Shown: positions 1 through 21,590 of the stretch, one piece after another
How the letters are laid out: every line of letters begins with the position of its first letter
Position numbering within the stretch: the stretch's first letter is position 1
NCBI GenBank assembly: GCA_026936335.1
Contig: JAPMXV010000066.1
Location: 1-23,159 of the forward strand
Length of the DNA stretch: 23,159 nucleotides
Source of the DNA: Mantamonas sphyraenae STR306
Lineage: Eukaryota > Protista > CRuMs
Reading direction: 5' to 3'
The notes under the pieces: generated by a model
Database searches by the model: none
What the model was told of the DNA's origin: nothing
Seen by the model: only the letters and a program-made list of their open reading frames with translations
Program-made: the position numbers and the translations under genes

Positions 1-3000
1 TGTTCGCGTCGAGCACGTGACGGGCGTTTGGAAATCAGCTGCTGAGGACTGCAGGTCGCATGACGTTTTGTGGCTGAAACATTTGGGGAACGGTCGGTTG
101 GATTCGGATACCTTGGAGCAAGCATGGCTTTCCGCGTCGATTCTACTTCATCACGGACGGGAATTGCTGAGATTCTGGGCTCGCACGACGTGAGCAAGAT
201 CCAGGAGCACTTGATCAAGCTGTTGAAAACGTGAAGCGGCTGACGTTTGGCACGGGCCGCAACGCCAGAGATGATCATGGGCGTCGAGAGCCAGCGAGCA
301 GAGGTGCTTCCGTTCCGACACCAGGTGCAGGTGGAGGGGCATGGTGGAGTACTGGATGAACAACGTGGAGGACGAAATGCGCAAGACGCTTCACCAGGTG
401 ACGAAAGAGGCAATCTTCTACTACCAAAAGAGCGAGCGCGTGGAGTGGTTCCTGAACGAGGCGTACCCTGCGATGAGCACGCTTGTGGGATCGCAGATCT
501 GGTGGACGTGGGAGGTGGAGGATGCGTTCCGGCAGGTGCGCCAGGCAACAAGCTGATGATGAAGCAGCTGAATGCACGTCTGCACGGCCAAATCGACGAT
601 CTGGTGGACCTTGTGCGCACGGACATCACAAGCAAGCAGTCGCAGAAGGTGAACCGCAAATCATCATCGACGTGCACGCCCGGGACGTGATCGAAGGCTT
701 TGTGCGAGACAGCATCCTGGACGAGCGGATTTGAGTGGGAGTCGCAGCTGCGTTTTCTACTGGAACCGAGGACTGGACGATATCCAGATCCGACAGTGCA
801 CGGGCCTCGTTCGGGTTCGGGTACGAGTACACGGGCCTGAGCGGGCGACTTGTGATTACGCCGTTGACGGACAGGTGCATCATGACGCTGACGCAAGCGT
901 TGTCCATGTTCAAGGGCGGATCGCCAGCGGGGCCGGCAGGCACGGGCAAGACGGAACGGTGAAGGACCTGGCCAAAACGATGGGTCTACGCTGCGTCGTG
1001 TTCAACTGCGGTGAGGGCCTGGACGTGGAGGCGATGGGGAGCATGTTCAGCGGTCTGGCGCAGACGGGCTCGTGGGGCTGCTTCGACGAGTTCAACCGCA
1101 TCGAGCCGCAGGTGCTGTCTGTGATTTCGACGCAAATCGCGAAATCCAGCAGGCGCTGATGCACAGGTACACGCAGTTTCCGTTCCAGGACCGAGAGATC
1201 CGACTGAATCACAGCGTGGGCATTTTCGTGACCATGAACCCTGGATACGAGGGCGCACGGAGCTGCCGGACAACCTGAAGGCGCTGTTCCGGCCCGTGGT
1301 GATGGTGGTGCCGGACATGGAACAGATTTGCGAGATCATGCTGTTTTCGCAGGGATTCAGCAGCGCCAAGGTGTTGTCAAAGAAGATGACGGTGCTGTAC
1401 AAGCTTGCGCGCGAGCAACTGAGCAAGCAGAACCACTACGACTTTGGTTTGCGTGCGCTGCGAAGCTGCTCGTGATGGCGGGTGCGCTGAAGGCGGTCGT
1501 CGCCCGAGTACAGCGAGGAAGCTGGTGTGATGCGCGCGCTGCGCGATATGAACCTGCCCAAGTTTGTGTTTGAGACGTGCCTCTGTTCCTGGGTCTGATT
1601 GCAGACCTGTTCCCGAAGCTGGATTGTCGCGTGTGCGCTACCCCGGTCTGCACGACGCCGTGGAAGGCGCGCTTGCAGAGCGCGGCCTGCAGGTGCTGTC
1701 CGAACAGGCGTTGACAAGACGATCCAGGTGTACGAGACGATGCTGACGCGCCACACAACCATGGTGGTGGGGTCCGACGGGAGGGGGCAAGACTGTCGTG
1801 CTGGAAACGCTTCAGCGCGCGCAGACGGCTCTGGGCTTGCATACGAAGCTGATTGTGCTCAACCCAAAGGCGGTGACGCTGCAGGAGCTGTACGGACGGC
1901 TGGACAAGAACACGCGCGACTGGACGCCCGGATTGCCTGTCGTATCTGTTCAAGGAGATGAACAAGCCGCTGATTGGAGACAAGAAGGAGGCGCGGTACA
2001 TGGTATTCGACGGCGACGTGGACCCCGTGTGGGTGGAGAACATGAACAGTGTGATGGACGACAACAAGCTTGCTCACGCTGCCGAACAGCGATAGGATTC
2101 TGCTTCAGGACCACTGCAAGCTTCTGTTTGAGGTGGCGCACCTGAAGTTTGCGTCGCCTGCAACGGTGTCGCGATGTGGCATGGTGTTTGTGGATCGCGG
2201 AACATGGGGTGAAGCCGTACTTCAAGACGTGGCTGGGCAGGCGCAACAACAAGAGCGAGGCCGAGGTGCTCGGGGCGTTTTTCGACAAGTACGTGAGCGC
2301 GTGCGTCGACTACGTGACGGAGGGCATCTTGGAAGGAATTGTGACGAAGAAGCTGCGCACAATCATCCCGTACACGCGGATGAACATGATGCGACAGCTG
2401 TGCACGCTGTTGGAGTCTGTGCTGGACCATCAGGAGCGCGCGGTGACGGATCCGAGCAGCCTGGAGGCGGTGTTTATCTTTTGCGTGATCTGGTCACTGG
2501 GTGGAGCGCTGGTGGAGGAGTCGCAGGTGAAGTTTGATGCGTTTGTGAAGAAACTGTCGGATCTGGTGATTGTGGACAACCCGGACCTGACGGTGGGCAC
2601 GGGTCAGCTGCCTGCGGCCCTGCCGACGCTGTACCAGTACTACTTTGACGTGAAAGTGAACAAGTGGATCCCGTGGGGCGACATGGTGCAGCCGTTCATG
2701 GCGCCCGAGGACGGCAAGTTTTCGTCGATCCTGGTGCCGACGGTGGACACGGTGCGCTACACGATGCTGATGGACATGGTGATGCGCACGCAGCAGCCGA
2801 TGCTGTTTGTGGGTGAGACCGGAACGGCCAAGTCGTCGATTACGCAGAAGTACATGAGGGGCCTGGACAGCGACCGATTCCTGACGCTGACGATGAACTT
2901 TAGTTCGCGCACGACGGCGCAGGACGTGCGCAACACCATCCAGGAGCCTCTGGAGAAGAAAACGCGCGACACACTGGGCCCGCCTGTGGGACGCATGCTT

Positions 3001-6000
3001 GTGACGTACGTGGACGACCTGAACATGCCGAGTGTGGACAAGTACGAGACGCAGCAGCCGATTGCGTTGCTGCGTCTGCTGATTTCGCGAGGCGGGTTCT
3101 ACGAGCGTGGCGAGCAGATCTTTTGGAAGAAGCTGCAGGACCTGCTCTTCCTGGGCTCCATGGGCCCTGCAGGCGGAGGGCGCAACGCAGTGGACCCCCG
3201 GTTCATCTCGCTGTTCAACGTGTTTAGCATCACGTTCCCGAGCGACCAGTCGCTGACCAAGATCTACACGAGCGTGCTGAACCACCACCTGCTGTCGTTC
3301 CCGGACGGGCTGCGTGACCTGTCGCGTGAGCTGACGTCGATGACGCTGAAGCTGTACCGAGCTGTTGTGCAGCACCTGCCACCGACGCCGAGCAAGTTCC
3401 ACTACATCTTCAACCTGCGCGACTTGTCGCGCGTGTACGAAGGTCTTTGCCTGAGCCGGCCGGATTCGTTCGACGGCGTGGAGCAGTTTGTGCGCCTGTG
3501 GCGCAACGAATGCCTGCGCGTGTTCCATGACAGGCTGATTTCTGTGGAGGACCGGCAGTGGCTGAACGACAAGATCGGACAGCTGATCAAGCACTACTTT
3601 CCGCGAGAGGCGGTTGGGGCACTGGAGGATCCGATCCTGTTTGGTGACTTTGACCAGGCGCTGGAGAGCGAGGATGCGCGTGTGTACAAGGACCTTGTGG
3701 ATCACGAGAGCGTGCGCAACCTGTTTATGGAGGTGCTGGAGGACTACAACGACCACCACCGCAAGATGGACCTTGTCCTGTTTGACCAGGCGCTGGAACA
3801 CCTTGTGCGCATCCACCGGATCATCCGCATGCCACGCGGCAATGCGCTCCTTGTGGGCATTGGTGGGAGCGGCAAGAGGAGCCTGACGCGCCTGGCGACG
3901 CATGCAGCTGGGTACGAGCTGTTCCAGATCACGCTGACACGCAACTACACGGAGGAGTCATTCCGTGAGGAGCTGAAGACGCTGTACAAGAAGCTCGGCG
4001 AGGAGGACAAGCAGGTGACGTTCTTGTTTACGGACAACGACGTGGTGCACGAGGAGTTTCTGGAGCTGGTGAACAACATGCTGACGAGCGGCATGGTGCC
4101 TGCGCTGTTTGCGGACGACGAGCGTGAAGCGTTGATCAGTGGGATCCGGTCGGAGGTGATCAAGCGCAACATCTTTGACACGCGCGAAAACTGCTGGAAC
4201 TACTTTGTGAACAAGTGCCGAGACAACCTGCACATTGTGCTGTGCATGTCGCCAGCAGGAGAGATGCTGCGGCAGAGGTGCCGCAACTTCCCCGGACTGG
4301 TGTCGAACACGGTGATCGACTGGTTCTTCCGCTGGCCCGAGACAGCGCTGCGTGCGGTGGCTGAGCACATGTTGGCGGAGGAGGACCTTCCGGAGCGCTT
4401 CCGAGAGGACATTGTGTCGCACATGGTGCTGACACACGAACGTGTGACGGAGCACTGCGCCGAGTTTGAGGCGGAGCTGCGACGCAGCAACCACGTGACG
4501 CCAAAGAACTACCTTGACTACCTGCACGGATACATGGGCCTGTTGAAGAAGCACCGAAAGAAGCTGGGAGAAGAAGCCAAGTTCCTGGACGACGGCCTGC
4601 GCGCGCTGATTCTGGCTGCACAGGAGGTGGAGGTGATGAACACGGAACTTGTGAAGAGCAAGGCGATTGTGCACCAAAAGAAGCTGGCGTGCGACGAGTT
4701 GCTGGCCAAAATCACGGAGCGAAACGCAAAGACCAAGGAGAAGCAGCTGGCGGCGAGCGAGAAGGAAGCGGAGCTTGAGGAGACGCAGCGCAGGGTGTCT
4801 GAGGAGAAGGCAGAGGCGGAAGGCCAGCTGGCAGACGCGATGCCAGAGCTGCTGGAGGCACAGGAGCTGCTGCAGAACTTGCCGCGCGAAAAGATCGTGG
4901 AGATTCGGTCGTACTACAACCCGATGCAGCAGATCCGGGACGTGTGCATCTGTGTTGTGATTCTGCGCGGGTTCAAGGACCACACGTGGAAGGGAGCCAA
5001 GGCGATGATGACGAGTCCGTCCTTCCTGCAGGACCTGCTGAACTTTGACGCGGAGACGCTGACGTCAAACAAGATGAACAAGGTGAAGGAGATCTTTTCG
5101 CAAATCGGGTCGCGCAGCGAGGTGGAGAGCATTTCGAGCGCAGGTGTTGCGCTGTATGATTGGGTCAAGTCGATGATCAACTTTTACTCGGTGATGCGAA
5201 ACGTGGCGCCGAAGCGTGAACGTGTGCAGGCGAAGGAGAAGGATCTGAAGCGCGCGAACAAGGAGCTGGAAAAGATCAAGATGGACGTGGCTGCACTGAG
5301 CGACGAGCTGATGAAACTGGGTGAGCTGTTTGCGGGCCAGACGGCAGAGCAAATGGAGCTGAAGGCGCGTGCGGAAGAGATGGAGGCGCACTTGACGGCA
5401 GCAAAGAAGCTGATCAGTGGGCTGGGCACGGAGCGGTCGCGCTGGACGGACGACCTGGCAGAGACGAAGCAGCGACGCGAGCGACTTGTGGGAGACAGCC
5501 TTGTGGCGGCGGCGTTCCTGAGCTACGCGGGCCCGTTCTCACACGAGTTTAGGAAGCGCATGCTTGAAGGGGAGTGGGTGCCGGACGTGATTGGGCGAGA
5601 GATCCCGATTACGGCGGACTACACTGTGGAGGCGCTGCTGACGGACGACGTGGAAGTGTCGCGTTGGTCGTCGCAAGGACTGCCGCCGGACGAGCAGAGT
5701 GTGCAGAACGGCATCCTGGTGACGCAGTCGACGCGTTGGCCGCTTTGCATCGACCCGCAGATGCAGGTGGTAGAGTGGATCAAGAAGATGGAGGGAAGTG
5801 CGCTGCATGTGACCACGTTTGACGACGGGGACTTTTTGCGCGCGCTGGAGTATGCGATCCAGTATGGGCGGCCGTTCCTGATTGAGGGTGTGGACGACGC
5901 GGTGGATCCCGTGATTGAGCCTGTGCTGGAGAAGGACATCAACGTGATTGGCAACAAGCGGTTCATCAACCTGAACGACAAGGACATCGACTGGGATCCT

Positions 6001-8961
6001 GCGTTCCGGCTGTACATGACGACCAAGGTGGCGAACCCTGCGTACAACCCGGAGCTGTTTGGAAAGACGGCTGTGGTGAACTGCTGCGTGACGCCGGATG
6101 GACTTGCAGAGCAGCTGCTGAGCGTGGTGGTCGGGTACGAGCGCAGCGACCTTGAAAAGTCGCGCACGAAACTGATCCAGGAAACGAGTGAGAACAAGGG
6201 CAACCTGAAGCGTCTGGAGGACACACTGTTGCGAGAGCTGGCACACTACGACGACGGGCGCAAGATGTTGGACAACACGGAGCTGATCGAGACGCTGGAG
6301 GACGCCAAGAGCAAGGTGGTGGAGATCAGCGAGAAGCTGGAGCAGGGACGACGCACAGCGAAGGACATTGAGGCGGTACGCAACGGGTACAAACCCGTGG
6401 CGAAGCGAGGCAGCATCTTGTTTTTCGCAATGAGCTCGCTGAGCGCGATGAATCCGATGTACGAGTATTCGCTGAACGCGTTTGTGGGCGTGTTTGAGGC
6501 GTCGCTGCGCGGGTCGAAGAAGGACACGATCCTGCAGACGCGGTTGATGTACATCATGGACACGCTGACGCGCAACGTGTACAAATACGTGTGCACGAGC
6601 CTGTTTGAGGAGCACAAGCTGACGTTTTCGTTCCAGATGGCGGTGATGATTCTGGAAGGCCGCGGCGGGATGGTGCGTTCGGAGCTGGAGTTTTTCCTGA
6701 AGGGCAATGTCAAGGTGGGCGGCAGCAGTTCGAGCTCGGGAAGCACAGGGCAGGTGGAAGGAGGCAGCAGCAGCAGCAGCAGCAGCAGCAGCGGCGAAGG
6801 GTCGCTGTCGGAGCTGGAGCGCGTGTCGTGGGTGGAAAAGAAGAGCTGGGAGGATCTGATGGCGTTGGGAGAGCTGGGCGGGGTGTTTGAAGAGGTTGTT
6901 CGGGGCGTGGCGGACCGTGGGAACGAGGCAGTGTGGATGGAGTGGTACCAGGACGCGACGCCCGAGGTGAAGAACCTGCCGCTTGGCCTGCACAGCAAGC
7001 TGAACCGGTTCCAGCAGCTGTGTGTGTTGCGTTGCTTCAGGCACGACCGCGTGGTGGTTGCGGTGAAGAATTTCATCACGACGACGCTGGGTGAGCAGTA
7101 CATCAACCCGATCCAGTCGTCGATTGACGACATCTTCCAGCAGAGTACGGCGACATCGCCGGTGGTGTTCATCCTGAGCCCCGGAGCTGATCCTGCAGCG
7201 GACATCTTCAAGCTTGGAGAGCAGCGTGGAATGGTGGGCAACACAAAGATTCGTCACCGTGCTCTGGGAGAAGGGCAGGAGAAGGCGGCGAAGCAGCTGA
7301 TTGAGATGGGGATCTCGCGTGGACAATGGGTGATCCTGATGAATTGCCATCTGCTGACGAGCTGGCTGAAGCCGCTGGAGAAGCTGCTGACGGAGAAGCT
7401 TGCGGAGAAGCCGAACCCAGACTTCCGGCTGTGGTTGACGACGGAGCCGACGGAAAAGTTCCCCGTGGGCATCCTGCAGCGGTCGCTGAAGGTGGTGACG
7501 GAGCCGCCGAATGGGCTGCGGCAGAACATGGAGCAGAGCTACTCGAGGATCACGGACGAGGATCTGGAAGAGTGCCCGCACTGGGCGTTCAAGCCACTGG
7601 TGTATGTGCTTAGCTTCTTCCACGCTGTGGTGCAGGACAGGCGCAAGTACGGAAAGATTGGGTGGAACATCGCGTACGACTTTAACGAGAGCGACTTTTC
7701 GACGTCGCTGACGCTGCTGAACACGTACCTGAGCAAGGCGCACGGGAACAAGGAGTCAGCGATTCCGTGGAACTCGCTGCGGTACTTGATTGGCGAGGCG
7801 ATGTACGGAGGTCGTGTGACGGACGACTTTGACCGACGTGTCCTGATGACGTACCTGAACGAGTACATGGGCGACTTTTTGTTTGACACATTCCAGCCAT
7901 TCCGGTTCTTTGAGAACGAGGAGGAAGGTCTGGTGTTCAAGGTGCCGGAGGACGGGCCGCGGGAAAACTATGTGACGGCGATCGAGGAGCTGCCGCCGAC
8001 GGACACGCCTGAGGTGTTTGGGCTGCACCCGAACGCAGAGATTGGATACCTGACGTCGTCGTCGCGACAACTGTGGCGAGACATGTTGAGCATCCAGCCA
8101 CGCACGACGTTGGGTAGCGGTGGGATGTCGCGGGAGACGTTCATCCTGGGCACGACGCATGAGCTGATGCAAAAGATTCCGGAGGAGTTTGATTTGCAGC
8201 GCATCGGAAAAGCGCTGGGAGACGAGCTGACGCCGAGCCAGGTTGTTTTGCTGCAGGAGCTTGCGCGATGGAACGCTCTGGTGAAGAAGATGAGCGTGAC
8301 GCTGCGTGACCTTGAGCGTGCGCTGAACGGCGAGATTGGGATGAGCATTGAGCTGGACGAACTTGCGACGTCGTTGTACAACGGACAGCTGCCGCGCAGG
8401 TGGCAAGAGCTGGCACCGTACACGGAAAAGTCGCTTGGTGGCTGGATGGCATACTTTGACCAGAGGTATCAGCAGTACCTGAGCTGGATCGAGAAGGGAG
8501 AGCCTGTGGTGATGTGGCTGTCGGGCCTGCACGTGCCGGAGGCGTATCTGACGGCGCTGGTGCAGGCGGGTTGCAGGCGACACGGGTGGCCGCTGGACAA
8601 GAGCACTCTGTTTACGCAGGTGACGGATTATCGGGAGGCGGATGAGATCACGGCGCGACCGGAGGACGGGTGCTACATCCAGGGCCTGTACCTGGAGGGA
8701 GCGAGCTGGGACCGGGAGCGCGGGTGCCTTACGGCGCAGCGAAACAAGGTACTTGTGGAGGAGTTTCCGATTGTGCAGGTGGTGCCCATCGAAGCGAGCC
8801 GACTCAAGTTGCACAACACGATTCGCACGCCTGTGTACGTGACGCAGCAGAGGAGGAATGCGATGGGAGTCGGGTTGGTGTTTGAGGCGGATATCCCGAG
8901 CCAGGAGCACGAGAGTCTGTGGGTGTTGCAGGGAGTGTGTCTGGTGTTGAACACGAATTGA
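1..8961 (+). CDS. DNAH10: Axonemal dynein heavy chain, inner arm I1/f alpha type (DNAH10 / Chlamydomonas DHC1-like); 5'-truncated, with frameshifts in ~1-2200
   Basis: AAA1 P-loop GPAGTGKTE (~930-957), [16 protein letters not shown] and [10 protein letters not shown] are spread over shifted frames. An uninterrupted ORF follows to TGA at 8961, with P-loops GETGTAKS and GIGGSGKRS, a stalk coiled coil, RWPLCIDPQ and [12 protein letters not shown]. The C-terminus [13 protein letters not shown]...[11 protein letters not shown] is typical of DNAH10. No introns seen. Confidence 0.93.
6766..6792 (+). repeat. (AGC)9 microsatellite encoding poly-Ser within a Gly/Ser insert of dynein
   Basis: Direct reading of the sequence; part of [29 protein letters not shown]. 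Confidence 0.95.
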
Positions 8962-9038
8962 GGGTGAGGGAGTGGAAGCAGAGCAATGGAGGATCAAGCA
9001 AGGATTGGACACAAATGGTTGACAAATGGTTGCACGCT

Positions 9039-10442
9039 CTATTGTTGCGGGTTGGGAAAATTGATCTTTGTGTGGTAGCCGTACTCGAGACCAGCAGTGT
9101 CGACGGAGAAGGAGCGGGTAGGCTGGTTTGTGATTTCAATGGTTGCGTTGCAGCGGACACCCAGTGCCTCAAAGTCGGAAAAGATGAATGTGTCGTAGGG
9201 AAAGAGGAGGCGATTGTACTGCAGGTGCGGGTGGCGGGGTGGAAAACGTGTCAGAAGGGGAGGACGGGAAAGGGCACGGGGAGGGCGACAACGATTGCGT
9301 ACCTGGTCGAGACGGCTGTCAAAGGTCAACGTGAGCTTGTGGTTGGTGGTCTCGAGAGTGAGGACCTGAGTGAGCGGGATCTTGGCCGTGCCAAGGTCGT
9401 CGGTGTACTGGACCCAGTTGCTGCGTGCGACGTCAAAGCGGATGAGCTTGCCGTCGTTGGTGGTGTCAACGACAGGGTTGGCGAAACGAGTCTCGTCCCA
9501 AATGACAACCTTGCGCATGCCGACGTGGGTGGCATTGGTGAGGCGGACGTCGCCGAAAGCGCCAAGGACCTGGTAGGCCGGGAAGCCAATGTCAGTGAGA
9601 CCTGTGCCTGCGATGATGCTGATGTCTTGCTCTGGATCAAGTTGGTTGGGCACAACGACGCGGAACCATGCCCAGGGGTCATCGACGGGAGGGTTGGGGC
9701 CAGATGCGGGGAAGCGCTCCCCCCAGTTCATGTCGCCGTAGGCACGGGCGAGTGTGCCTTCTTTGAACGTGTACGTCTGGTCACCCACAGTGATGGTGCC
9801 GCGCACGAGGGCGTCGTGGGAATGGGTGTTCCAGCCGATTTCGCCGCGGCCAGCCGTTTCGGAAATCCATTCGAGGTCCTGCTGGCCATACCAGCCGAAA
9901 ATGCGGGTCAGAGTAAGGTCCCAGGTGATGGGCAGATCCTTTGCACAGTTTTCAGCAAACCAATAGTGCTCGGTGTGGGTCAGAGAGCCGCGGAGGTGCA
10001 GAGTGTCGTTGGAGTCGAGTTGCTGCATGGAAAAGTCGTCGCCCACGGTGACGTCGTAGTAGTTGGAGACGGAGAGAGCATCGAGGGGCCAGCGTTCGTA
10101 CTTGCTGATGCCGGTCATGGTGGAGTTGGGGCCTCGGAAGCGGTTGGCGTAGCTCAGGTAGGCGCCTGTGTTTTGCTGCGACTTGCCACCGCGGAACATG
10201 CCGTAGGAGAAGGCGTGGAAGCGGCCGGAACCGTCCTGGATCTCAAAGAACCACCACTGGAAGAAGGGCTTGTCTTTGGGGAACTCGTCGAGGCGGTAAC
10301 GCTGGTATTTGGGGCCCGGGTTGACGACGCCGTCGTCGGCAAAGAGGCGGGCCGAGACCAGCGTGGCGGTGGTAGCCACGAGGAGTAGGAAGGAGAGGAG
10401 GAGGGCGGACGCCAGGGTGCTGGAGGAGTGTTTGCTGCGCAT
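9039..10442 (-). CDS. Secreted tocopherol cyclase-like (AttH/lipocalin-like beta-barrel) protein; exons 10442-9303 and 9218-9039
   Basis: ATG at 10442 opens a signal-peptide-like segment (MRSKHSSSTLASALLLSFLLLVATTATLVSA). Motifs PFFQWWFFEI, GTITVGDQTYTF and AYGDMNWGERFP...WAWF resemble tocopherol cyclase FFEGWYF and AYxEKNWGxxFP..WFW. Ends at TAG. The family call is from motif memory. Confidence 0.65.
   Translation of the reverse strand: MRSKHSSSTLASALLLSFLLLVATTATLVSARLFADDGVVNPGPKYQRYRLDEFPKDKPFFQWWFFEIQDGSGRFHAFSYGMFRGGKSQQNTGAYLSYANRFRGPNSTMTGISKYERWPLDALSVSNYYDVTVGDDFSMQQLDSNDTLHLRGSLTHTEHYWFAENCAKDLPITWDLTLTRIFGWYGQQDLEWISETAGRGEIGWNTHSHDALVRGTITVGDQTYTFKEGTLARAYGDMNWGERFPASGPNPPVDDPWAWFRVVVPNQLDPEQDISIIAGTGLTDIGFPAYQVLGAFGDVRLTNATHVGMRKVVIWDETRFANPVVDTTNDGKLIRFDVARSNWVQYTDDLGTAKIPLTQVLTLETTNHKLTLTFDSRLDQVRNRCRPPRALSRPPLLTRFPPRHPHLQYNRLLFPYDTFIFSDFEALGVRCNATIEITNQPTRSFSVDTAGLEYGYHTKINFPNPQQ
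9219..9302 (-). other. Spliceosomal intron, 84 nt, in-frame and stop-free
   Basis: CAG|GTACGC donor, branch TCTGACAC, CTGCAG acceptor. Removes the low-complexity peptide VRNRCRPP...PHLQ. Confidence 0.85.
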
Positions 10443-10574
10443 GGTTGGAAGGTTGTGTTGGGAGAGAATGCGTTGTTTTGTTTGGATTCGGGGCGTGATT
10501 GTGTCGTGTGGGTAGTGCGTGTGGCTCAGTACAGCTGTAGAGTTTGTGAATGTGTGCGTGCGTGTGGAGGGCAA

Positions 10575-12698
10575 TCACATCATGCCGCCTGCACCCGGGT
10601 AGCCGCCCTGCTGTTGCTGCTGGGGAGTGAGCTTGATCATGTCGTCGATGCGGAGGATGGTGATGGCGGCCTCGACGGCAAACTCAAAGCTCTTGAGCTT
10701 GCTCATGGTCGGCTCGACGACACCGCGAGCGACGTTGTCGACGACATCGCCCTGGATGAGGTCCAAGCCGTAGCGGAGATACTTCTTGTCGTCGTCGTTG
10801 TCTTTCTGGGCGAGGTGGTGGAGACCGAGAAGGGTGGAGACTAGGTCCATGCTGTCCTGGGCGGCGTTGACAGCGAGGGTCTTGGGGATGACAAGGAGAG
10901 CCTGGGAGAACTCATAGACGGCGAGGGCTTCGCGGGTCTTGAGGATGGAGGCGTAGCTCTCGAGGTGGACGGAAAGGGCCGTCTCGACTGCGCCGCCGCC
11001 AGGGACGATACGCTTGGACTCAAGGGTGCGCTGGACAACGCACATGGCGTCGTGCAGACTGCGGTCCATCTCGTCGAGAACCATGCTGTTGGGACCGCGG
11101 AGGATGATGGAGGAGGCGCGAGTGTTTGCGCAGCCCTTGATGAGGATGAGCTCATCGTCGGAAACGCGCTCCTGGCAGACCTCTTCGGCGGCGCCGAGGT
11201 CCTCGGGGTCAAACTCTTCGTCGCCCTCCATGGTGGCAAGGGAGGTGACAAGGCGGCCGCCGGTGATCTTTGCGATGCGCTTGAGGTCGTCGCGCTTGCA
11301 GCGGCGGACGCCCATGACACCGTTGTCGACCATGTACTTGAGGACGAGGTCGTCGATGCCCTTGGTGGTGAGGATGACGTTTGCGCCTGCGTTGATGATC
11401 ATCATGACGCGGTCCTTGGCCATGTCGAGTTCCTTCTGCTTGATCTTCTCGAGCTGCTCGACGTCCTCGAGCTCGACCTTGATGCCCATGGCGAGGCGGC
11501 CCTTGTTGAGGTTGAAGTCGACGCAGGCGATCTTTGCGTCGGCGATGCGCATGGGCATGAGCTGGGAAGCGACGGTGCAGTTGAGTGCAAAGCCCGGAAC
11601 AACGAAGCTCTCCTTCATGGACTTGCCGTGGGATTTGAGGACGTTGACGCTCTTGACTGGGTAGATGGTGTCGCCCATGTAGTTGATGCGCTTGACGCGT
11701 GTGATTGCGTCGTAGCAGACGTTTGCCCAAAAGTCGCTGCTGGTGTTGCCGAGGACCTTTGAGCTGAGGGAAGTGGTGGCAGCCTGGAGGAGGACGTCCT
11801 TGTCGTCTTCGGTGATGTCCACCGAGAGGTTTTCGGCAATGAATTTCTTCACCTGCTTGAGAGCCATGCGGTAGCCCTTGATGACGCTGGTGGGGTGAAT
11901 CTGCTTCTTGACGAGCTCGTTGGCGCGCTTGAGGAGCTCTGCGGCGAGGATGACGACGGAAGTTGTACCGTCGCCCGACCTCGGTGTCCTGCAGACCGGC
12001 AAGCTCGACGAGGATGCGTGCAGCCGGGTGCTCGACGTCGAGCTGCTGGAGGATGGTGGCACCGTCGTTGGTGATGAGGACATCTCCGATGTCGTCGACA
12101 AGCATTTTGTCGAGGCCGACGGGGCCGAGGGAAGTCTTGACAATGTTTGCAATGGCTAGGCAGGCGGTGACTGGGAGGAGATCAGAGCGGGATCAGGAAT
12201 TCGCATTTGCAGGCGGGGAGTGTGCGAGGGAGCGGGTCAGTGGAGGGCGGAGGACGTGGATGTGGCGGTTGGGTGGGAGTGGGAACAGCGGGTGGGGGAG
12301 AGGGGTGGGAGGTTGGGAAGGTGTGGGGCGTGCGGGAGGCGGAGGAAGGAGGAAGGAGAGGGTGCTCAGAACGGGAGCAAACGGCCAGAAACGGCAGGGC
12401 GGACGGGAGTGCACAGGGCAGAGGGACAGGGCAGCATGTGCAGGAACAGGGGCGAGCGAGACAGGAAGGCGGAGGGATGGGTGGGGAGGGCGTGGGGTGG
12501 CGTGTGGAAGAGGATGGGGCTGTGGACGGAAAAGTGGCGCCAAAATGTGGAGGCGAAGCACGCATGGGATCGCGGGCGGGGCTACGGAGAGGAGGGAGGG
12601 AGGGAAGGAACATGGAGGAGGCACATACCGTTCTGCGTGCGCACGTCCTGGCCATGGGTGCGTTCTCCGTTGACACCGGCGATGGAGGTAGAGGACAT
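10575..12698 (-). CDS. TCP1: T-complex protein 1 subunit alpha (CCT-alpha); exons 12698-12629 and 12170-10575; one apparent 1-nt insertion near 11974
   Basis: Spliced N-terminus [54 protein letters not shown], then [25 protein letters not shown] and [15 protein letters not shown]. The GQDVRTQNV and [15 protein letters not shown] motifs indicate the alpha subunit. Confidence 0.96.
12171..12628 (-). other. Spliceosomal intron of TCP1, 458 nt
   Basis: AACG|GTATGT donor and CTCCCAG|TCACC acceptor. Splicing restores the conserved QN-V-TA. Confidence 0.92.
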
Positions 12699-12762
12699 GG
12701 TGTGTGTCGAGTAGTGGGTTTTTTGGTGGTTGGGGCTCCGGCTTGGCCAAGGAAACGGAGTG
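12699..12762. promoter_or_regulatory. 64-bp ATG-to-ATG spacer; putative bidirectional promoter for TCP1 and NOP58
   Basis: Divergent start codons at 12698 (-) and 12763 (+), both supported by conserved N-termini. Promoter function is inferred. Confidence 0.7.
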
Positions 12763-15036
12763 ATGCTTGTGCTTTTCGAGAACCCCGCGGGCTTTGCCGT
12801 GTTTAAAGGTGTGTGCCGCCGCAAGGAAAGGGGAGAGAGGGTGGTGGAGGAGCGGCTGGTGTTAAGGGGCTTTGCTGGGGTGCGCGGACTGACACCTGTG
12901 TGCGTGTGCTTTTGCGCTGCAGTGGACGACGATGTTGTGAGCGAAGTGAAGGATCTGCACAAGGAGTTTGCAGATGTGGAGTCTGCCAAGTCGATGTGAG
13001 TTTGGCAGGGAATGGGAAGGAATGGAAAGGGGGTTGTGGGCGGCTGAGCACATGCACGGGCCTGGGTAGGTGGGAACGGGGGCCTAACGATGGACTGCGT
13101 ACGCGTGCACACACCACAGGATCAAGCTGCACAAGTTTATGAAGTTTGAGGACACGACAGAGGCTCTGGCGGCGACGACGGCGCTTGTGGAGAGCGAGCT
13201 GAGCAAAGGCTTGAAAAAGTTTCTCAAGTCGGCCCTGAAAGGCGAGGACGGGTCGGTGCTGGCTGTGGCAGACGCCAAGCTGGGCAAGCAGATCAACGTG
13301 AGTTTGGCGGGTGGAGGGAGGGCGGAGGAGAGGCGTTGAGACGGGACCGGGGAGTGGGCAGTGGGCAGTGGGCGAGGGGACGGAGAGCGGGAGACGGTGA
13401 AAAGAGGGGATGGAGGGGAAGGAAGGCGTTGGAGGAAACGGGTGTGGGGAGGGGGCAGGAGGGGAGCGAGGCAGGGAGAGGAGGAGAGAGTTGATGGAGA
13501 CATGGGGAGGGCTGGGGCAAGGGTGCATGGTGAGAGAGGAAGCAGGGGCATGTGGGAGTGCCTTGGGGGCGGGAGTCGTGTGGGACGGAAATCGCATGCA
13601 GGGTCGGCGTGCAAAGACCCGCGGCTGCGTGGATGTGGAGAGGGGTGTTGTGGAGAGAGACGGGGCAAAGAGGGAAAGCTGACACGGCATGTGCGCACGG
13701 ATGATTGCAGAAGAAGCTGGGGATTGAGATTGCACACGGAGACGCGGTGAACGAGCTGATGCGTGGAATCCGTTCGCAGCTGGCTGGGCTGCTGGGAGCC
13801 AAGGGAGCGAGGGCCAGCTGTCTGCTATGTCGCTGGGTCTGTCGCACTCACTGTCGCGTTACAAGCTGAAGTTTTCGCCGGATAAGGTGGACACGATGAT
13901 TGTGCAGGCAAATCAACCTGCTCGACGACCTGGACAAGGAGCTGAACACGTACTGCATGCGTGTGCGCGAGTGGTACGGGTGGCACTTTCCGGAGGCAAG
14001 CAAGATTGTGACGGATAACATCCAGTACGCCAAGATGATCCTGAAGATGGGCAACCGCAGCAACTGCCAGGAGACGGACCTGTCGGACGTGCTTCCGGAG
14101 GACATTGAAACGGAGCTGAAGGCGGCGTCGATCATCTCGATGGGATCGGAGGCGGCGGAAGAGGACATCAGCAACATCCAGGAGCTGAGCGAGCAGATTG
14201 TGAGCATCTCCGAGTACCGCAACCAGCTGTCGGAGTATCTGAAGAACCGCATGAACGCAATTGCGCCGAACCTGACGGTGCTTGTGGGAGAGCTTGTGGG
14301 TGCGCGTCTGATTGCGCACGCGGGATCGCTGATCAACCTGGCAAAGCAGCCTGCGAGTACGGTGCAGATTCTGGGCGCGGAGAAGGCGCTGTTTAGGGCG
14401 TTGAAGACGAAGCACGAGACGCCGAAGTACGGACTGATCTACCATGCGTCGCTGGTGGGCCAGGCGGCGCCAAAGAACAAGGGCAAGATGTCGCGTGTGC
14501 TCGCGGCCAAGGCGGCGCTGTCTGTGCGTGTGGACGCGCTGGGAGACAAAGACGAGCCGACGATTGGGTTGGAGGACCGGGAAAAGGTGGAGCAGAGGCT
14601 GGAGGCGCTGGAAGGACGAAGCCTCAAGTCGATCAACGCCAACGCCATCAAGGTGAAGGGGGCGTTTGACTACGGCACAGGCATGGCCAAGGGGGCCTAC
14701 GACGCTGCTGGAGACAGCACGTTGGAGGGCAAAGCGAAGGGGGGCAAGAAGAGGAAGCGCGAGGAAAGCGAGGACGAGGCAGAAAGCGACGAGGAGGACG
14801 CCGATGAGGATGAGGAGGAGGAGGAGGAGGTGAAGACGCCCAAGAAGAAGAAGGCAAAGAAGGAGAAGAGCTCGAAGAAGAAGAGCGACAAGAAGAAGAA
14901 GAAGAAGAAGGGCAGCGAGGATGATGATGAGGAGGAAGGAGGCAGCAGCAGCAGCAGCAGCGGGAAGAAGGAGAAGAGCTCAAAGAAGAAGAGCGACAAG
15001 AAGAAGAAGAAGAAGAAGAAGAGCAGTGATGAGTGA
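12763..15036 (+). CDS. NOP58: Nucleolar protein 58 (box C/D snoRNP); exons 12763-12808, 12923-12995, 13120-13297, 13711-15036; apparent indels near 13805 and 13910
   Basis: [58 protein letters not shown] (NOP58-type rather than NOP56), [41 protein letters not shown], and a Lys-rich charged tail. Confidence 0.96.
12809..12922 (+). other. NOP58 intron 1, 114 nt
   Basis: G|GTGTGT donor, branch ACTGACAC, CTGCAG acceptor; frame restored (FK-V-DDD). Confidence 0.85.
12996..13119 (+). other. NOP58 intron 2, 124 nt
   Basis: AT|GTGAGT donor, branch CCTAAC, CACAG acceptor; gives KS-M-IKLHKF. Confidence 0.9.
13298..13710 (+). other. NOP58 intron 3, 413 nt, G/A-rich
   Basis: AAC|GTGAGT donor, branch GCTGACAC, TTGCAG acceptor; gives LGKQIN-KKLGI. 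Confidence 0.9.
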
Positions 15037-15086
15037 TGAGTGAAAGGGGGGGGGGGGAGAGAGCAAATGGAGATGGTGGTTTTTGT

Positions 15087-16863
15087 TCAGAAGCGGGGTC
15101 CGCCACGGCTGAAGGAGGACTGGGGAGAGCGGAGCATGGGTGACAGCGGGGAATTCCGGGAGGGACTAGCCCAGGAGGAAGAACCTGCAGATGAGCGGCG
15201 GCCACTCGAGCGAGAGCGGGGACCGGAGCTTGTGCGAGGGGTGATGGCAGCCTTTTTGTAGGAGTTCTTTTCGCCGGCGAGGGCGTTGCGGCGGTGGACA
15301 AACTTGTCGTGTAGAGAACGTTCCTGGACGCTCCACTTTTGCTGCCACTGCTTTTCGGCCTTTTCGTATTGCAGGGTAAAGTTTGTCTTTGTGTCTTCGT
15401 GCTTGGCCTTGAGACGGTCGAGCTCGCGCTGGTGCTTCTTGTCGAGCAACTTGCGGGAGCGGGCAAACTCGTCGCTGATGATGCGTGTCTCCCATTCGCG
15501 GCGCTCCTTCTTGACGGTTGTTTCGAGGTGGGCCTTTTCGTTTTTGGCCTCGCTGAAGCGGTTGGCCTTCATGAGGGCGCGCACGCGCTTTTCGAGGTCG
15601 ATTGCGTTTGCACTGGGGCGGAAGCGTGCGGAGCGGAGCTGCTGGGCAAGCTTCTTTTCGAGCTCGTCCACTTCGTACTGTTGCCGTTGCTTGGTTTCCT
15701 CAAGGGAGAGGACGAGGCGGTCGAGGAGTTCTCGCTCGCGCGTCTCCCAATCGGAGCGGAAATTGATAAAGTCTTCTTCCTCGAGGACCTTGAGCTCGCG
15801 CTGGCAGGCCTGGTACTCCTTGGCGAGGAGCTCCTTCTTTGCTTCGTAGGTCCTGTTGCGGATGTCCTTGATCTCTGCTGTGAGGGCCTCTGCGTTGTCA
15901 AAGTCGAGCTCGTCTTGGGCTACGAGCAGCTGGTCCTGGAGAGCGGAGACGACGGTGTAGTAGGCCTGGAAAGGGTACAGGAGGGTGGAAGCGAGAGTGT
16001 GAGTGGGGTGGAGACGGGCGGAGGCGACGGGAATGGGAGAGAGGCAGGCGTGAGGGAGCGGGTTTGCGGAGGAGGGGTTGGTGGTTTACCTCGTCATCGG
16101 TGGCCAGGCGCTGAATCTCTTTGCGAGACCAGCGCTTGTGGGCGTTGGTTGTGGAGAGGCCGAGGCTGTCATCGTCGTCTGCGTCGTCGCTTGCGTCGTC
16201 GTCGTCGTCGTCGTGTGTGAAAAAGTCTGACTCGGAATCGCGCATGAAGCGGCTAAGGTGACGCTGGGCACGGACCTGCTTTGTGAGAGAGGGAGCAGAC
16301 TCACGCTCCTCGAGGGTGACACGTTTGGACGGAGAGGATGAGGATGATGATGCAGATGTGTTTGCGGTGGTGCGTGCGTTGGTGGAGGCTGAGGTGCGTG
16401 AGGAGCTGTTGTTGCCGTTGGAGAGACGCGCGCCGGATGACACGGCGGGGCCGTCGGCGTGGCTGGGAGTAGTGGAGGGAAGGACGGATGGGGAAGAGGA
16501 GGCAGATGCACGAGAAGAGGTTGTGAGCTGCGAATGGCGGCTCATCTCGATGAGCTGAGAGACACTGGGCTCGGGAGAGGACGGGGAGGCCTCGCGCTCG
16601 GCGGGGGGCGAGGAGGAAGTGCGCATGGAGGAGCGGCCAAGGATCTCGTCAACTTTGGAGAGAGAGCGAAGGGCAGAGGTGGTGGAGGAGGTGGTGGTTG
16701 ATTTTGAGGTGCTGGCAGTGGAGGAGGAGGAGGAGGAGGAAGAGGCGGAGGATGACGCGGACGTGTCTGCGCCAAAGTCCAGGGAGGACGGCGAGGAGCC
16801 GTAGAGGAAGCTGTGCGGCTGTGAGTACGAGGACGTGCTCCGGTGTGTGCCGCCGCCAGACAT
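15087..16863 (-). CDS. Hypothetical protein with a Ser-rich disordered N-terminus and a coiled-coil C-terminus carrying two UVR-like motifs; exons 16863-16090 and 15965-15087
   Basis: ATG at 16863 (MSGGGTHRSTSSY). After splicing the frame is open to TGA. LQDQLLVAQDELDFDNAEALTAEIKDI and LEKRVRALMKANRFSEA resemble UvrB/C (UVR) helical hairpins. C-ending codon bias matches other minus-strand genes. Confidence 0.8.
15966..16089 (-). other. Spliceosomal intron, 124 nt
   Basis: GAG|GTAAAC donor, branch-like ACTCACAC, TTTCCAG acceptor; joins two open frames (TDDE-AYYTV). Confidence 0.82.
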
Positions 16864-16947
16864 GCGTAGTGTGAGTTTTGGGTGGGCCTGCGCAGCGAGA
16901 GGCGAGGCAAGCCAACTCGCAACCGCAAGGTGACTTTTTCCGAGAGC
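16864..16947. promoter_or_regulatory. 84-bp ATG-to-ATG spacer; putative bidirectional promoter
   Basis: Divergent starts at 16863 (-) and 16948 (+). Promoter function is inferred. Confidence 0.6.
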
Positions 16948-19115
16948 ATGTCGGGAAAGAAGGACGAGAAGCAAGGGCAAGGGCAGGGAAAGGGCGTCCA
17001 AGACCTGGGCCTGCTGCCGGACGGCTCGACATTTGTGGTGCCGGTTGTGGAGGACGTGACGGCGACGCTGAAGCATCCGTCGAGGTGGTCGCTGCCTGTG
17101 GTTGTGACGCTGGCGTTGTCTGCAATGCATGTGGCGACTCTGTTTATGGACCTGCCGCGGTGGGTGTACATCGGGCTGTTTTTGATCTGGCGCATCGGGT
17201 ACAACGTGGGGCTGGGCTTCCTGCTGAGCTGGCAGTCGAAAGAGCAGAAGCTGACGCGATACATGGCGTCGTTTGCGGAGAAGGGCAAGCGGGGCTGGGT
17301 GGAGCGGCTGCTTGTGTGGATTGTGGAGGACCACATGCGGCGTGTGAACGACGGCGCAGCGTATTCGTTTGATGTAAGGAATGCCGGGAAAGCGGAAGTC
17401 GGGGGAATGGGCGCTTGGAATTGCGGCTGACACGTCACGGGCGCCGAATTTAGGCCAATCCGGCACAACTGAATGCATGGCTGCTGTTCCGCCACCTGGC
17501 GGACATCTGCTTGGTGAACGACTTTACCGCATTTGTGGTGTTGTCCCTGGCATCCATCCAGGTGCCCGAGCCATTCACGTTCCTTGATGCATGCGGCTAC
17601 GTGGGCGGAGTACTGCTGTGCTACGGCGGCTGGTGGGCCAAGGTGGATGCAGCACGCAGGATCGGGTCGTTTGCGTGGTGTAGGTTTGCGCAGAGAGAGT
17701 GTGGCGCTGGCGGAGCGGGAGTCGGGGAAGGGGTTGGGGGGCCATTTGCGGCTGGGAGAGTGGGGCGCTGACGCGGTTGGGGCACAGACTGGGGCGATTT
17801 TTTCTTTCTCAAGGCAGGAACGTTTGAATTGTGCAACGAGGGCGTGTTTGGTGAGTGTGGGGTGGGGTGGGGCCACGAGGGAGCGGGAGGAGTGAGGCGA
17901 GGGAGGATTATTTGCTGACACTCTGCTGGCAGCTCTGGCACCCCATGCGATGTACGGGCTGGGTAAGTTGTGGAAGGAAGGTGTGTGTTGAAGTGGGGTG
18001 AGGCTAACACATGCGTGTGGGGCATCACAGGGTACATCTGGTGCTACGGGGCGTGCCTAATTGCTCGCTCGACGGGCCTGGCGTTTGTGGCACTGGGGAT
18101 GCATCTGATGCAGGGACTGTTTCTGGTGTTTACCGAGCAGCCGCATATCCAGAGGACGTACGGCACGGACGAGGATGAGGCGGACGCAAAGGAAGCGGCT
18201 GCGGAAATGGACGAGTACTTCAAGCAGGACGTGCTGGTTCGTCATCAGCTTCCGTACCGGTCGACACATATTCTGATGGGCATCCTGGTGATCTACCAGG
18301 TGATGTTGTTTGCGACCAACTCGACGTCGCGCCTGTTCTGGCTGTTGCACGCAGTGGTGTGGCAAATTGTGCACAGCGTGGGGCTGGGATGGGTGCTGCA
18401 TGCACAGAGCACGTCGCAGATCATCTCGAAACGCTTTGAGGCGGCAGGACTGGGCCTGGCGGAGGCGTATCAGGCATGGCAGGCGGTGTACAGTGTGGTG
18501 TCGCTGAGCTGCGCGTCGAGCGCAGTGGCAGTGGCAATCAGCCACTACGAGTTTCCAGAAGCGCTGGACAGCGGGTGGCTGCTGCGACAAATCATAGGAC
18601 TGATTCTGGTTGGCGTGCACTTTCTGGTGAACATGGAGGTGATCGACGTGCTCGGAGAGAGGGGCGTGTTTTACGCGGACATCTGGCTGTCGCACATCCC
18701 GCACCCTCTGGTGTACAAGGGCATCTACCACTGGTTGGATCACCCGGCGGCGTCCCTCGGGTACGCGGGGTACTACGGGCTGGCTGTGGCGTCTGGGAGT
18801 GCACACGCACTGGCGCTGGCGGTAGGGTCGCAGCTGCTGCATTGCTGGCTGATCATTTTGGTGGAGACGCCGCATTTGCAGCGCACACGGCAAGAGGAGC
18901 TGCGTGTGCGGGGCAGCACGGCTGCAGAGGTGAGGAAGCTGGCACAGAAGAGCCCCGTGTTGGCGCAGGTGATTGACAAAACGGACAAGGCGATTGACAA
19001 GGCGATTGACAAGGTGCGTGCTACGGTGTTGGATGGGTTTGAGTTGCAGGAGGATGGGAAGAAGGGGAAGGGGAAGGGGAAGGGGAAGGAGAAGGAGAAA
19101 GGAAAGAAGGATTGA
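16948..19115 (+). CDS. CHO2: Phosphatidylethanolamine N-methyltransferase, CHO2/PEM1-type with two PEMT domains; exons 16948-17373, 17454-17679, 17788-17850, 17933-17962, 18031-19115
   Basis: The spliced product has GLLPDGSTFVVP, WRIGYNVGLGFLLSWQS, NAWLLFRHLADICLVNDF, WWAKVDAARRIGSFAWYWGDFFF, GVFALAPHAMYGLGY and EQPHIQRTYG. A second copy reads GVFYADIW...GIYHWLDHP...VETPHLQR. These match fungal Cho2 motifs. Four GT-AG introns (17374-17453, 17680-17787, 17851-17932, 17963-18030) each have a CTRAC branch site. Confidence 0.88.
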
Positions 19116-19150
19116 AGGTGAGGTGAGGTGAGGTGAGGTGAGGTGAGGTG
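19116..19150 (+). repeat. (AGGTG)7 microsatellite immediately after the CHO2 stop codon
   Basis: Direct reading of the sequence. Confidence 0.95.
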
Positions 19151-19185
19151 GGTGAGTGGGGAGGATGTGTGAATGAAAGGATGGT

Positions 19186-21570: not shown

Positions 21571-21590
21571 TGCCAGCCGTGACCCTGCGC

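What the first reader, a model, noticed from the sequence alone, without database searches (positions are those of the whole stretch)
2149..19115. Transcription-independent strand skew gives + and - genes opposite synonymous codon usage
Seen, by hand count of fourfold Leu/Val/Ala/Thr/Pro/Ser codons: NOP58 14221-14340 has 17/20 G-ending and none C-ending; dynein 2881-2940 has 9/10 G-ending; TCP1 ~10621-10740 has 13/16 C-ending. TCP1 and NOP58 are both housekeeping genes and start 64 bp apart, so expression level cannot easily explain this. Introns are G/A-rich on the + strand whether the host gene is + (NOP58, CHO2) or - (TCP1, 9219, 15966, 22390). Inference: this is a Borrelia-like leading/lagging-strand mutational asymmetry in a eukaryote, implying a fixed fork direction along this arm and an unusual replication or repair regime.
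Basis: partly seen in the sequence, partly recalled or inferred. Interest (0 to 1): 0.8.

Follow-up and report, generated by a model that had tools for sequence, protein, structure and literature searches.

The report
Gene-independent G/C strand skew, telomere-oriented
In this chromosome end of the protist Mantamonas sphyraenae, the DNA strand a gene lies on, not the gene or its expression, decides whether silent codon positions and introns are G-rich or C-rich; the G-rich strand points to the telomere at nearly every chromosome end sampled, probably a very strong imprint of DNA-copying direction.

Summary
Observation confirmed. The window is a whole 23-kb subtelomeric contig of Mantamonas sphyraenae ending in (TTAGGG)n. 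Its + strand has G 8706 against C 5181. Fourfold sites are G-rich in + genes (942 G, 188 C) and C-rich in CCT-alpha on the - strand (192 C, 28 G). Introns of both gene orientations are 60-76% purine on the + strand, and RNA-derived contigs show them spliced. The three hand counts reproduce exactly.

The same polarity runs through nearly all of the 90-kb sister contig C28. Its one reversal is a recent inverted duplication.

A proxy map (strand of C-free 35-nt runs) shows the G-rich strand pointing 5'->3' to the telomere at 26 of 28 contig ends. Beyond about 30-60 kb the polarity alternates in blocks.

So this is a terminal domain of one polarity, not an arm-wide fixed fork direction. A replication-direction-linked mutational asymmetry is the best reading (0.7). 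[quoted passage not shown]

The scan had already noted the same skew on other DNA of this genome. I found no paper describing it. Six MutS-type genes and one UDG gene are present.

The parts
1..23159 (+). Terminal skew domain. The + strand, which runs 5'->3' to the telomere, is G-rich throughout (GC skew +0.25 overall, peak +0.46 at 12-13 kb).
1..8961 (+). Dynein heavy chain, C-terminal two thirds. ORF 2149-8961, with upstream AAA_6 pieces at 731-1159 and 1599-1961. Fourfold sites G 723, C 142.
   Evidence: Pfam AAA_7/8/9, MT, Dynein_C; composition. On C28 the same gene is one 4559-codon ORF whose fourfold skew rises from +0.42 to +0.84 toward the telomere.
9039..10574 (-). Unnamed - strand ORF with a weak tocopherol-cyclase-like match and an intron near 9219. 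Fourfold sites C 170, G 34 on its own strand.
10629..12699 (-). CCT-alpha (TCP1): exon 12630-12699, intron 12171-12628, exon 12170-10629. Fourfold sites C 192, G 28. In the in-frame C28 copy they are C 215, G 10.
   Evidence: Pfam Cpn60_TCP1; 72% ortholog and tblastn; splice joint in RNA-derived contigs; composition
12171..12628 (-). CCT-alpha intron. In + strand letters it is G 0.53, C 0.14, A 0.23, T 0.10, so it is a pyrimidine-rich RNA.
12763..15036 (+). NOP58. Introns 12809-12922, 12996-13119 and 13300-13710 are purine-rich RNA with GC skew +0.40 to +0.63. Last-exon fourfold sites G 91, C 27.
   Evidence: Pfam Nop; sequence read
15898..17478 (-). Unnamed - strand ORF with an intron near 15966. 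C-rich at all three codon positions on its own strand (position 2 skew -0.37; fourfold C 172, G 40).
17970..19115 (+). Phospholipid methyltransferase (PEMT/CHO2-like). Fourfold sites G 128, C 19.
   Evidence: Pfam PEMT
19116..19185 (+). C-free GGA-rich tract (39 G, 16 A, 15 T, 0 C), about 4.04 kb from the contig end. It marks the start of a subtelomeric block shared by other chromosome ends.
   Evidence: the same run lies about 4.04 kb from the end at C1 left and right and at C2 left, and at 4.1 kb on C28
19186..22979 (-). Two telomere-adjacent - strand ORFs, 19186-21570 and 21591-22979, with no Pfam match. The first holds a 1.07-kb direct repeat (19270-20342 and 20424-21425, 89% alike). Fourfold skew on the + strand is weaker here, +0.42 and +0.26.
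23044..23159 (+). Telomere, (TTAGGG)n, at the 3' end of the G-rich strand.

Best explanation
A strongly strand-asymmetric mutation or repair process has driven weakly constrained sites toward G on one strand and C on the other. The affected sites are fourfold codon positions, introns and spacers. The process follows a chromosome-scale direction rather than gene direction.

The window is the last domain of a chromosome. Here that direction is the same in essentially every cell generation, so the whole 23 kb has one polarity, and so does about 47 kb or more on the sister contig.

The most likely carrier of direction is the replication fork. If forks run outward to the telomere, as is usual for the last replicon, the G-rich strand is the lagging-strand template, which has the sequence of the nascent leading strand. 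That is the same G>C sign as in bacteria.

The process mainly removes C that follows a pyrimidine on that strand and replaces it with G, and to a lesser degree with A. This keeps G+C high and makes the strand purine-rich.

Shown: strand dependence, independence from gene orientation, sequence-context dependence, and telomere orientation at ends.
Inferred: the link to replication, the direction of the forks, and the chemistry.
For: 1. Fourfold sites follow the chromosome strand in all four Pfam-verified genes of the window. On C28 they do so in 14 of 17 verified genes. The three exceptions lie in a zero-skew zone or in an inverted duplicate.

2. Pooled fourfold composition, read on the G-rich strand, is nearly the same for genes coded on it (G 0.525, C 0.174) and against it (G 0.567, C 0.166).

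3. Introns of + and - genes have the same + strand composition, and RNA-derived contigs show them spliced.

4. Within one 13.7-kb dynein ORF the fourfold skew climbs from +0.42 to +0.84 toward the telomere.

5. The G/C ratio at fourfold sites depends on the 5' neighbour on the G-rich strand: T 10-24, C 3-6, A 2.6, G 0.4-1.7. The dependence is alike for genes on either strand, so it acts at the DNA level and not the codon level.

6. A 3.9-kb inverted duplicate, 99.5% alike, carries the opposite skew to its surroundings. The skew is therefore inherited history, not local selection.

7. The proxy agrees with the sign of the real 5-kb skew at 21 of 24 runs on C28. On C1 the left 18 kb gives 10 of 10 runs on '-' and the right 44 kb gives 20 of 20 on '+'. 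Within 30 kb of a telomere the polarity is telomere-directed 31:1 in 13 contigs. Counted by contig end it holds at 26 of 28, p 3e-6.

8. Replication passes every base once per generation. That fits a genome-wide equilibrium this extreme.
Against: - There is no direct replication data, so fork direction is assumed and not measured.
- Sharp and gradual switches show no clear asymmetry in my data. On C1 the median gap is 6 kb for G-rich-to-C-rich switches and 11 kb for the reverse, p 0.23. The C28 profile has both kinds.
- Unverified earlier notes speak of sharp G-to-C switches. If sharp switches are origins, that would reverse the sign and require an origin near every telomere.
- A G:C ratio of 10-20:1 at silent sites is far beyond any replication skew I know of in a nuclear genome.
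- Mismatch repair is not obviously missing: there are six MutS_V genes.
- The most distal 4 kb has weaker fourfold skew.
- The most distal 4 kb is shared among ends, so those hits are not independent. For this reason I also counted only hits 6-30 kb from the end, which gave 25:1.
- One contig end is opposite (C5 left) and one is mixed (C2 right).
Confidence: 0.7

Rival explanations
1. The cause is still replication, but with the opposite sign. Each conserved subtelomeric block holds an efficient origin, so forks run inward over the last 30 kb or so. The G-rich strand is then the leading-strand template, and the nascent leading strand is C-rich, as reported weakly for yeasts. Sharp G-rich-to-C-rich switches would be origins.
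For: - Yeast leading strands are enriched in C and A (PMC3459929).
- On C1 three of the G-rich-to-C-rich switches are very sharp, 0.8 to 3 kb.
- Earlier first-reader notes describe sharp G-to-C switches (unverified).
- Every end carries a conserved block about 4 kb long that could hold an origin.
- Fourfold skew weakens in the last 4 kb.
- The context data fit loss of G before a purine on the other strand equally well.
Against: - The sharpness difference is not significant (p 0.23).
- C2 and C3 show sharp switches in both directions.
- On C28 the skew falls gradually between 64 and 80 kb, which this model does not predict.
- Efficient telomere-proximal origins at all ends would be unusual among studied eukaryotes (my own knowledge).
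Confidence: 0.22
2. The cause is not replication but repeated 5'->3' resection at DNA ends. At telomeres and at recurrent break sites the strand that ends 3' at the end is left single-stranded, and its cytosines are damaged and lost. This gives a G-rich strand pointing at every end and at every hotspot.
For: - It predicts the telomere-directed polarity at all ends.
- It predicts strength that fades with distance from the end.
- It predicts loss of C specifically.
- Subtelomeric single-strand hypermutation after telomere uncapping is known in yeast (my own knowledge).
Against: - The domains are 5-45 kb and tile the whole chromosome.
- Resection tracts of that length at every locus, often enough to set a 10:1 equilibrium, are implausible.
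- The skew is weakest, not strongest, in the last 1-4 kb.
Confidence: 0.06
3. The cause is transcription-coupled mutation or repair, or translational selection on codon choice.
For: - AT skew of bulk DNA does follow gene orientation.
- CCT-alpha shows a stronger fourfold skew (0.91) than its neighbours NOP58 (0.60) and dynein (0.6-0.84). This allows a small extra preference for C-ending codons.
Against: - Neighbouring genes that start 64 bp apart, both with heavy cover in RNA-derived contigs, use opposite third letters.
- The sign follows the chromosome strand, whatever the gene strand, in the verified genes that lie in clearly skewed DNA.
- Introns and both gene classes share one composition on the G-rich strand.
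- The skew forms a gradient inside a single ORF.
Confidence: 0.02
4. The cause is direct selection for a purine-rich or G-rich strand, for example through quadruplexes, R-loops or chromatin. Alternatively it is an assembly or sequencing artefact.
For: - G-rich runs are abundant: about 7,650 C-free 35-mers genome-wide.
- The window contig does carry single-letter indel errors.
Against: - The signal is strongest at silent sites, inside intact conserved ORFs.
- Independent DNA and RNA contigs agree with the window apart from isolated differences: two base differences and four single-letter indels over 4.6 kb.
- An inverted duplicate keeps its old skew.
- The 5'-neighbour dependence points to mutation.
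Confidence: 0.03

Closest known systems
Bacterial replication strand skew that splits codon usage by strand (Borrelia burgdorferi, Chlamydia muridarum, Lawsonia intracellularis; PMC2089121, PMC2671203)
   Same: Genes on the two strands have separate synonymous codon usage, set by strand-specific mutation rather than by expression. One strand has G>C. If forks run outward at the ends, the sign of the G/C skew is the same as in bacteria.
   Different: This is a nuclear, linear, multi-domain genome of about 66 small chromosomes. The G-rich strand is A-rich rather than T-rich at silent sites and introns, so it is a purine-type skew, not a keto-type one. Fourfold G/C skew reaches 0.6-0.9. There are many polarity switches per chromosome instead of two replichores.
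Replication-associated skews in yeasts and the human skew 'N-domains' (PMC3459929 and the work it cites)
   Same: These are nuclear genomes in which skew is linked to fork direction, is partly independent of genes, and forms domains between origins.
   Different: Those skews are weak and need averaging over many origins. Yeast leading strands are C+A-rich and human ones G+T-rich. Here the skew is visible in single genes by eye, and the terminal domains are uniform at nearly all ends.
Cytosine damage on the lagging-strand template with abasic-site bypass (APOBEC-type mutagenesis in yeast models and tumours; PMC5605239, PMC6130095)
   Same: C is lost on one replication strand, preferentially after a pyrimidine (T>C>A>G here), with outcomes that include C>G.
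   Different: There is no evidence here for a deaminase, and I ran no search for one. The resemblance rests on equilibrium composition only, not on observed mutations. Loss of G before a purine on the other strand fits the data equally well.
Kinetoplastid strand asymmetry along polycistronic units (my own knowledge)
   Same: A protist with long domains of one skew sign that switch at defined points.
   Different: There the genes are co-oriented with the skew. Here the two gene orientations are mixed inside one domain.

Membership tests
Replication-associated compositional strand skew | The skew is independent of the direction of transcription. | tested here: met
   All 4 verified genes in the window and 14 of 17 on C28 follow the chromosome strand. 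Both gene classes have the same composition on the G-rich strand.
Replication-associated compositional strand skew | The skew is present, and strongest, at weakly constrained sites (fourfold sites, introns). | tested here: met
   Fourfold skew is 0.54-0.91 and intron skew 0.40-0.63, against 0.25 for bulk DNA.
Replication-associated compositional strand skew | One constant polarity where fork direction is fixed by geometry, that is, at chromosome ends. | tested here: met
   26 of 28 contig ends conform. Within 30 kb of a telomere, hits are telomere-directed 31:1. This rests on a proxy that matched the real skew sign at 21 of 24 runs.
Replication-associated compositional strand skew | Sign switches coincide with mapped origins and termini. 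| not testable with these tools
   No replication map exists for this organism in the papers I searched. Only one 4.6-kb stretch could be laid with reads.
Replication-associated compositional strand skew | The substitution spectrum depends on orientation relative to the fork. | tested here: inconclusive
   The inverted-duplicate arms differ at only 8 sites, none of them G/C. Window-to-C28 differences are unpolarised and cluster in the divergent last 4 kb.
Transcription-coupled strand asymmetry | The skew sign follows the coding strand. | tested here: not met
   On their own strands, + genes are G-rich and - genes C-rich.
Translational selection on codon usage | Expressed genes share one set of preferred codons. 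| tested here: not met
   CCT-alpha and NOP58 both have heavy cover in RNA-derived contigs and start 64 bp apart, yet they prefer C-ending and G-ending codons respectively.

The most novel reading that the evidence does not exclude
The skew is a quantitative fossil record of fork direction. It is strong enough to read initiation and termination zones of all ~66 chromosomes of a deep-branching eukaryote from sequence alone. It would be produced by an unusual pyrimidine-to-purine (mainly C>G) process acting on one template strand. That process also reshapes intron composition and protein composition according to the strand a gene lies on.
Probability: 0.5. Interest if true: 0.9.

Novelty: new variant of a known kind. 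Interest (0 to 1): 0.8.

Why it matters
Replication-linked strand skews in nuclear genomes are so weak that they need genome-wide averaging. Here a single gene shows a G:C ratio of up to about 20:1 at silent sites.

If the link to fork direction holds, three things follow.
- Mantamonas would give a sequence-only map of replication for a lineage near the base of Amorphea.
- It would offer a natural system for studying which template strand suffers which damage.
- It would be a case where introns work whether they are purine-rich or pyrimidine-rich RNA.

There is also a practical warning. Codon-usage and composition-based gene finders, expression proxies and phylogenomic models will be misled in this genome unless the strand domain is taken into account.

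Tried and rejected
1. Fetching whole telomere-to-telomere contigs. I fetched no more DNA by any route. After that I used only the places and strands of pattern matches.

2. Gene models from public annotation. M. sphyraenae proteins are not in the protein collection; the best CCT-alpha hit is 72% identical. The contig look-up would therefore not have found them.

3. A period-3 G pattern as a polarity proxy. It separated the strands only 2-3:1 because of G at codon position 1. I replaced it with C-free runs.

4. Mutation spectrum from the window against C28. The first 19 kb differ at about 30 sites. The other 350 or so differences lie in the divergent last 4 kb. Per-site A/G and C/T difference rates are equal. 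This was uninformative.

5. Spectrum from the inverted duplicate. There are only 8 differences.

6. Loss of mismatch repair or uracil excision as the cause. Six MutS_V genes and one UDG gene are present, so there is no gross loss.

7. Sharp against gradual switches, to place origins. No significant asymmetry.

8. Amino-acid effect. Genes coded on the G-rich strand have a higher ratio of G-codon to C-codon amino acids (median 2.05 against 1.44, 7 genes each). The protein families differ, so this is only suggestive.

9. Literature. The genome paper (PMC10492846) has no mention of skew, strand or codon. None of the 12 papers that name the species has a title or abstract pointing to it.

ORF pieces were searched by reference only.
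Full report
WHAT THE WINDOW IS

The window is the whole of contig C66 of a 25,061,354-base, 78-contig assembly. Size, contig number, 59% G+C and TTAGGG ends match the FALCON assembly of Mantamonas sphyraenae (PMC10492846).

The 3' end of the window is (TTAGGG)n, from about 23044. The window aligns over its full length to the reverse complement of C28:865-23990 at 97.8% identity. There are about 30 differences in the first 19 kb and about 350 in the last 4 kb. It is therefore most likely the other allele of the left end of C28.

Against DNA and RNA-derived contigs the window has single-letter indels at 11974, 13802, 13910 and 14079. The one at 11974 breaks the CCT-alpha frame, which is open on C28.

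THE GENES

Pfam gives dynein heavy chain (+), CCT-alpha/TCP1 (-), NOP58 (+) and a PEMT/CHO2-type methyltransferase (+). Four further - strand ORFs have no firm family.

CCT-alpha and NOP58 start 64 bp apart, with ATGs at 12699 and 12763. RNA-derived contigs of run X3 cover the exons of both genes. They splice out the CCT-alpha intron 12171-12628 and NOP58 introns 12809-12922 and 12996-13119, and they join 13299 to 13711.

CHECK OF THE OBSERVATION

G is 8706 and C is 5181 on the + strand. The skew is positive in every 1-kb window.

Over whole ORFs, fourfold sites read as follows.
- Dynein: G 723, C 142.
- NOP58: G 91, C 27.
- PEMT: G 128, C 19.
- CCT-alpha, on its own strand: C 192, G 28.

Pooled + genes against CCT-alpha give an odds ratio of 34, p 7e-93.

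Introns have the same + strand make-up whichever strand hosts the gene. NOP58 intron 3 and the CCT-alpha intron are both 53% G and 76% purine on the + strand. One is therefore a purine-rich RNA and the other a pyrimidine-rich RNA, and both are spliced.

BEYOND THE WINDOW

C28 is 90,380 bases with a telomere at its start. Its skew has the corresponding sign almost throughout. It peaks at -0.43 at 9-10 kb, fades to about 0 at 33 kb and at 61-65 kb, and returns to -0.27 at 80-88 kb.

I verified seventeen ORFs there by Pfam. Fourteen have fourfold skew of the domain's sign, whatever their own strand.
- Genes on the + strand: CCT-alpha -0.91, Tam41 -0.51, USP7 -0.51, ADK-like -0.54.
- Genes on the - strand: PEMT -0.74, NOP58 -0.60, dynein -0.60, cadherin-like -0.30 to -0.54.

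Two of the three exceptions, the metallophosphoesterase and the kinesin, lie where bulk skew is about 0. The third is a PABP gene in a 3.9-kb arm (49016-52911). That arm is an inverted copy, 99.5% alike, of 57866-61753. It carries +0.41 where its twin carries -0.41. This explains the only positive stretch of C28.

Inside the single 4559-codon dynein ORF, the fourfold skew rises from +0.42 at 27 kb from the telomere to +0.84 at 14 kb.

NATURE OF THE ASYMMETRY

Read on the G-rich strand, fourfold sites are G 0.53, C 0.17 for genes coded on that strand. They are G 0.57, C 0.17 for genes coded against it. Any transcription or selection component is therefore small.

A exceeds T on the G-rich strand at fourfold sites of most genes (the three cadherin-like ORFs are the exception) and in most introns, though not in bulk DNA. 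That makes it a purine-type asymmetry, unlike the G+T type of bacteria and the C+A type of yeasts.

The G/C ratio depends on the 5' neighbour on the G-rich strand: 10-24 after T, 3-6 after C, 2.6 after A, and 0.4-1.7 after G. The dependence is alike in both gene classes. This points to a DNA-level process.

Either of two processes would fit. One is loss of C after a pyrimidine on the G-rich strand. The other is loss of G before a purine on the opposite strand. Composition alone cannot choose between them.

Six MutS_V genes and one UDG gene are present.

POLARITY AT CHROMOSOME ENDS

I used instead the places and strands of a pattern: one C followed by 34 non-C letters, which matches once per C-free run. 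On C28 its strand agrees with the sign of the surrounding 5-kb skew at 21 of 24 runs. The three misses lie where |skew| is 0.14 or less.

On the telomere-to-telomere contig C1 (441 kb) the pattern reads as follows.
- The first 18 kb give 10 of 10 runs on '-'.
- The last 44 kb give 20 of 20 runs on '+'.
- The interior alternates about 19 times.
- Two of those alternations come from inverted-repeat pairs.

Rarer versions of the pattern reached C1-C31. Telomere junctions gave the contig lengths.

In 13 contigs of known length the counts are these.

| Distance to nearest telomere | Toward telomere : away |
|---|---|
| 0-30 kb | 31:1 |
| 6-30 kb | 25:1 |
| more than 30 kb | 30:20 |

Counting contig ends instead of hits, and ignoring the shared subtelomeric block, 26 of 28 ends conform. 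C5 left is opposite and C2 right is mixed. The binomial p is 3e-6.

INTERPRETATION

The phrase 'a fixed fork direction along this arm' needs narrowing. The fixed polarity is a property of the last 20-50 kb of each chromosome. The interior is a mosaic.

A replication-direction imprint is the best explanation. It acts on every base in every generation. It predicts a constant direction at ends. It also predicts alternating interior domains.

Which template strand is G-rich depends on whether terminal forks run outward, which I favour, or inward from origins in the conserved subtelomeric block. My data on switch sharpness do not decide this.

A resection-based model explains the ends but not the tiling of the interior. 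Transcription, codon selection and artefact are excluded by the data above.

KNOWN OR NEW

Earlier follow-ups of this scan reached the same general reading on other pieces of this genome. What this window adds:
- the polarity at chromosome ends
- the neighbour-context dependence
- the within-gene gradient
- the inverted-duplicate control
- RNA support for the introns

The genome paper does not mention skew, strand or codon usage. None of the 12 papers naming the species has a title or abstract pointing to it. My searches for comparable nuclear cases returned only the weak yeast and human skews and organelle or bacterial examples.

Noticed in passing
window 11974, 13802, 13910, 14079: Single-letter indels relative to DNA (X2, X4) and RNA-derived (X3) contigs of public runs. 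The one at 11974 breaks the CCT-alpha reading frame in this contig, while the C28 copy is open. The window contig looks like an incompletely polished haplotig.
   Followed up: partly
C28 49016-52911 and 57866-61753 (L007-L009); C1 22.2/27.0 kb and 234.2-234.9/243.3-244.0 kb: Inverted duplications a few kb long with 4-9 kb spacers. On C28 the arms are 99.5% alike and each holds a PABP gene. In all three pairs the G-rich strands of the arms point toward each other. They could be real palindromic duplications or long-read assembly artefacts.
   Followed up: partly
window 19116-23159; C1, C2, C7, C8, C9, C18, C19, C30 about 4.0-4.3 kb from their ends: A conserved subtelomeric block. A C-free GGA-rich tract lies about 4.04 kb from the contig end (4.1 kb on C28), and a second shared 35-mer lies at about 4.2-4.3 kb. 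Both are always in the same orientation to the telomere. The block holds - strand ORFs without a Pfam match. In the window, ORF 19186-21570 contains a 1.07-kb direct repeat that is 89% alike. Earlier notes of the scan describe a telomere-adjacent gene family.
   Followed up: partly
C28 71307-89999 (L010, L011): Very long - strand ORFs of 1276, 4156 and 614 codons with many bacterial cadherin-like (Cadherin_4, Big_9) repeats. They run off the contig end. Codon position 1 is strongly G-rich (skew +0.41 to +0.56), so the protein is rich in amino acids with G-starting codons (Gly, Val, Asp, Glu).
   Followed up: no
C29 11.5-67.8 kb: Six copies of the subtelomeric 35-mer lie spread over 56 kb of one contig, all on the '-' strand. 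This suggests an expanded array of the chromosome-end family there.
   Followed up: no
fourfold sites after G, C28 genes: After a G on the G-rich strand the usual G excess is absent or reversed (G/C 0.4-1.7), so GGG glycine codons are avoided even in G-rich-strand genes. The cause is unknown; it could be mutation context or avoidance of G runs.
   Followed up: partly
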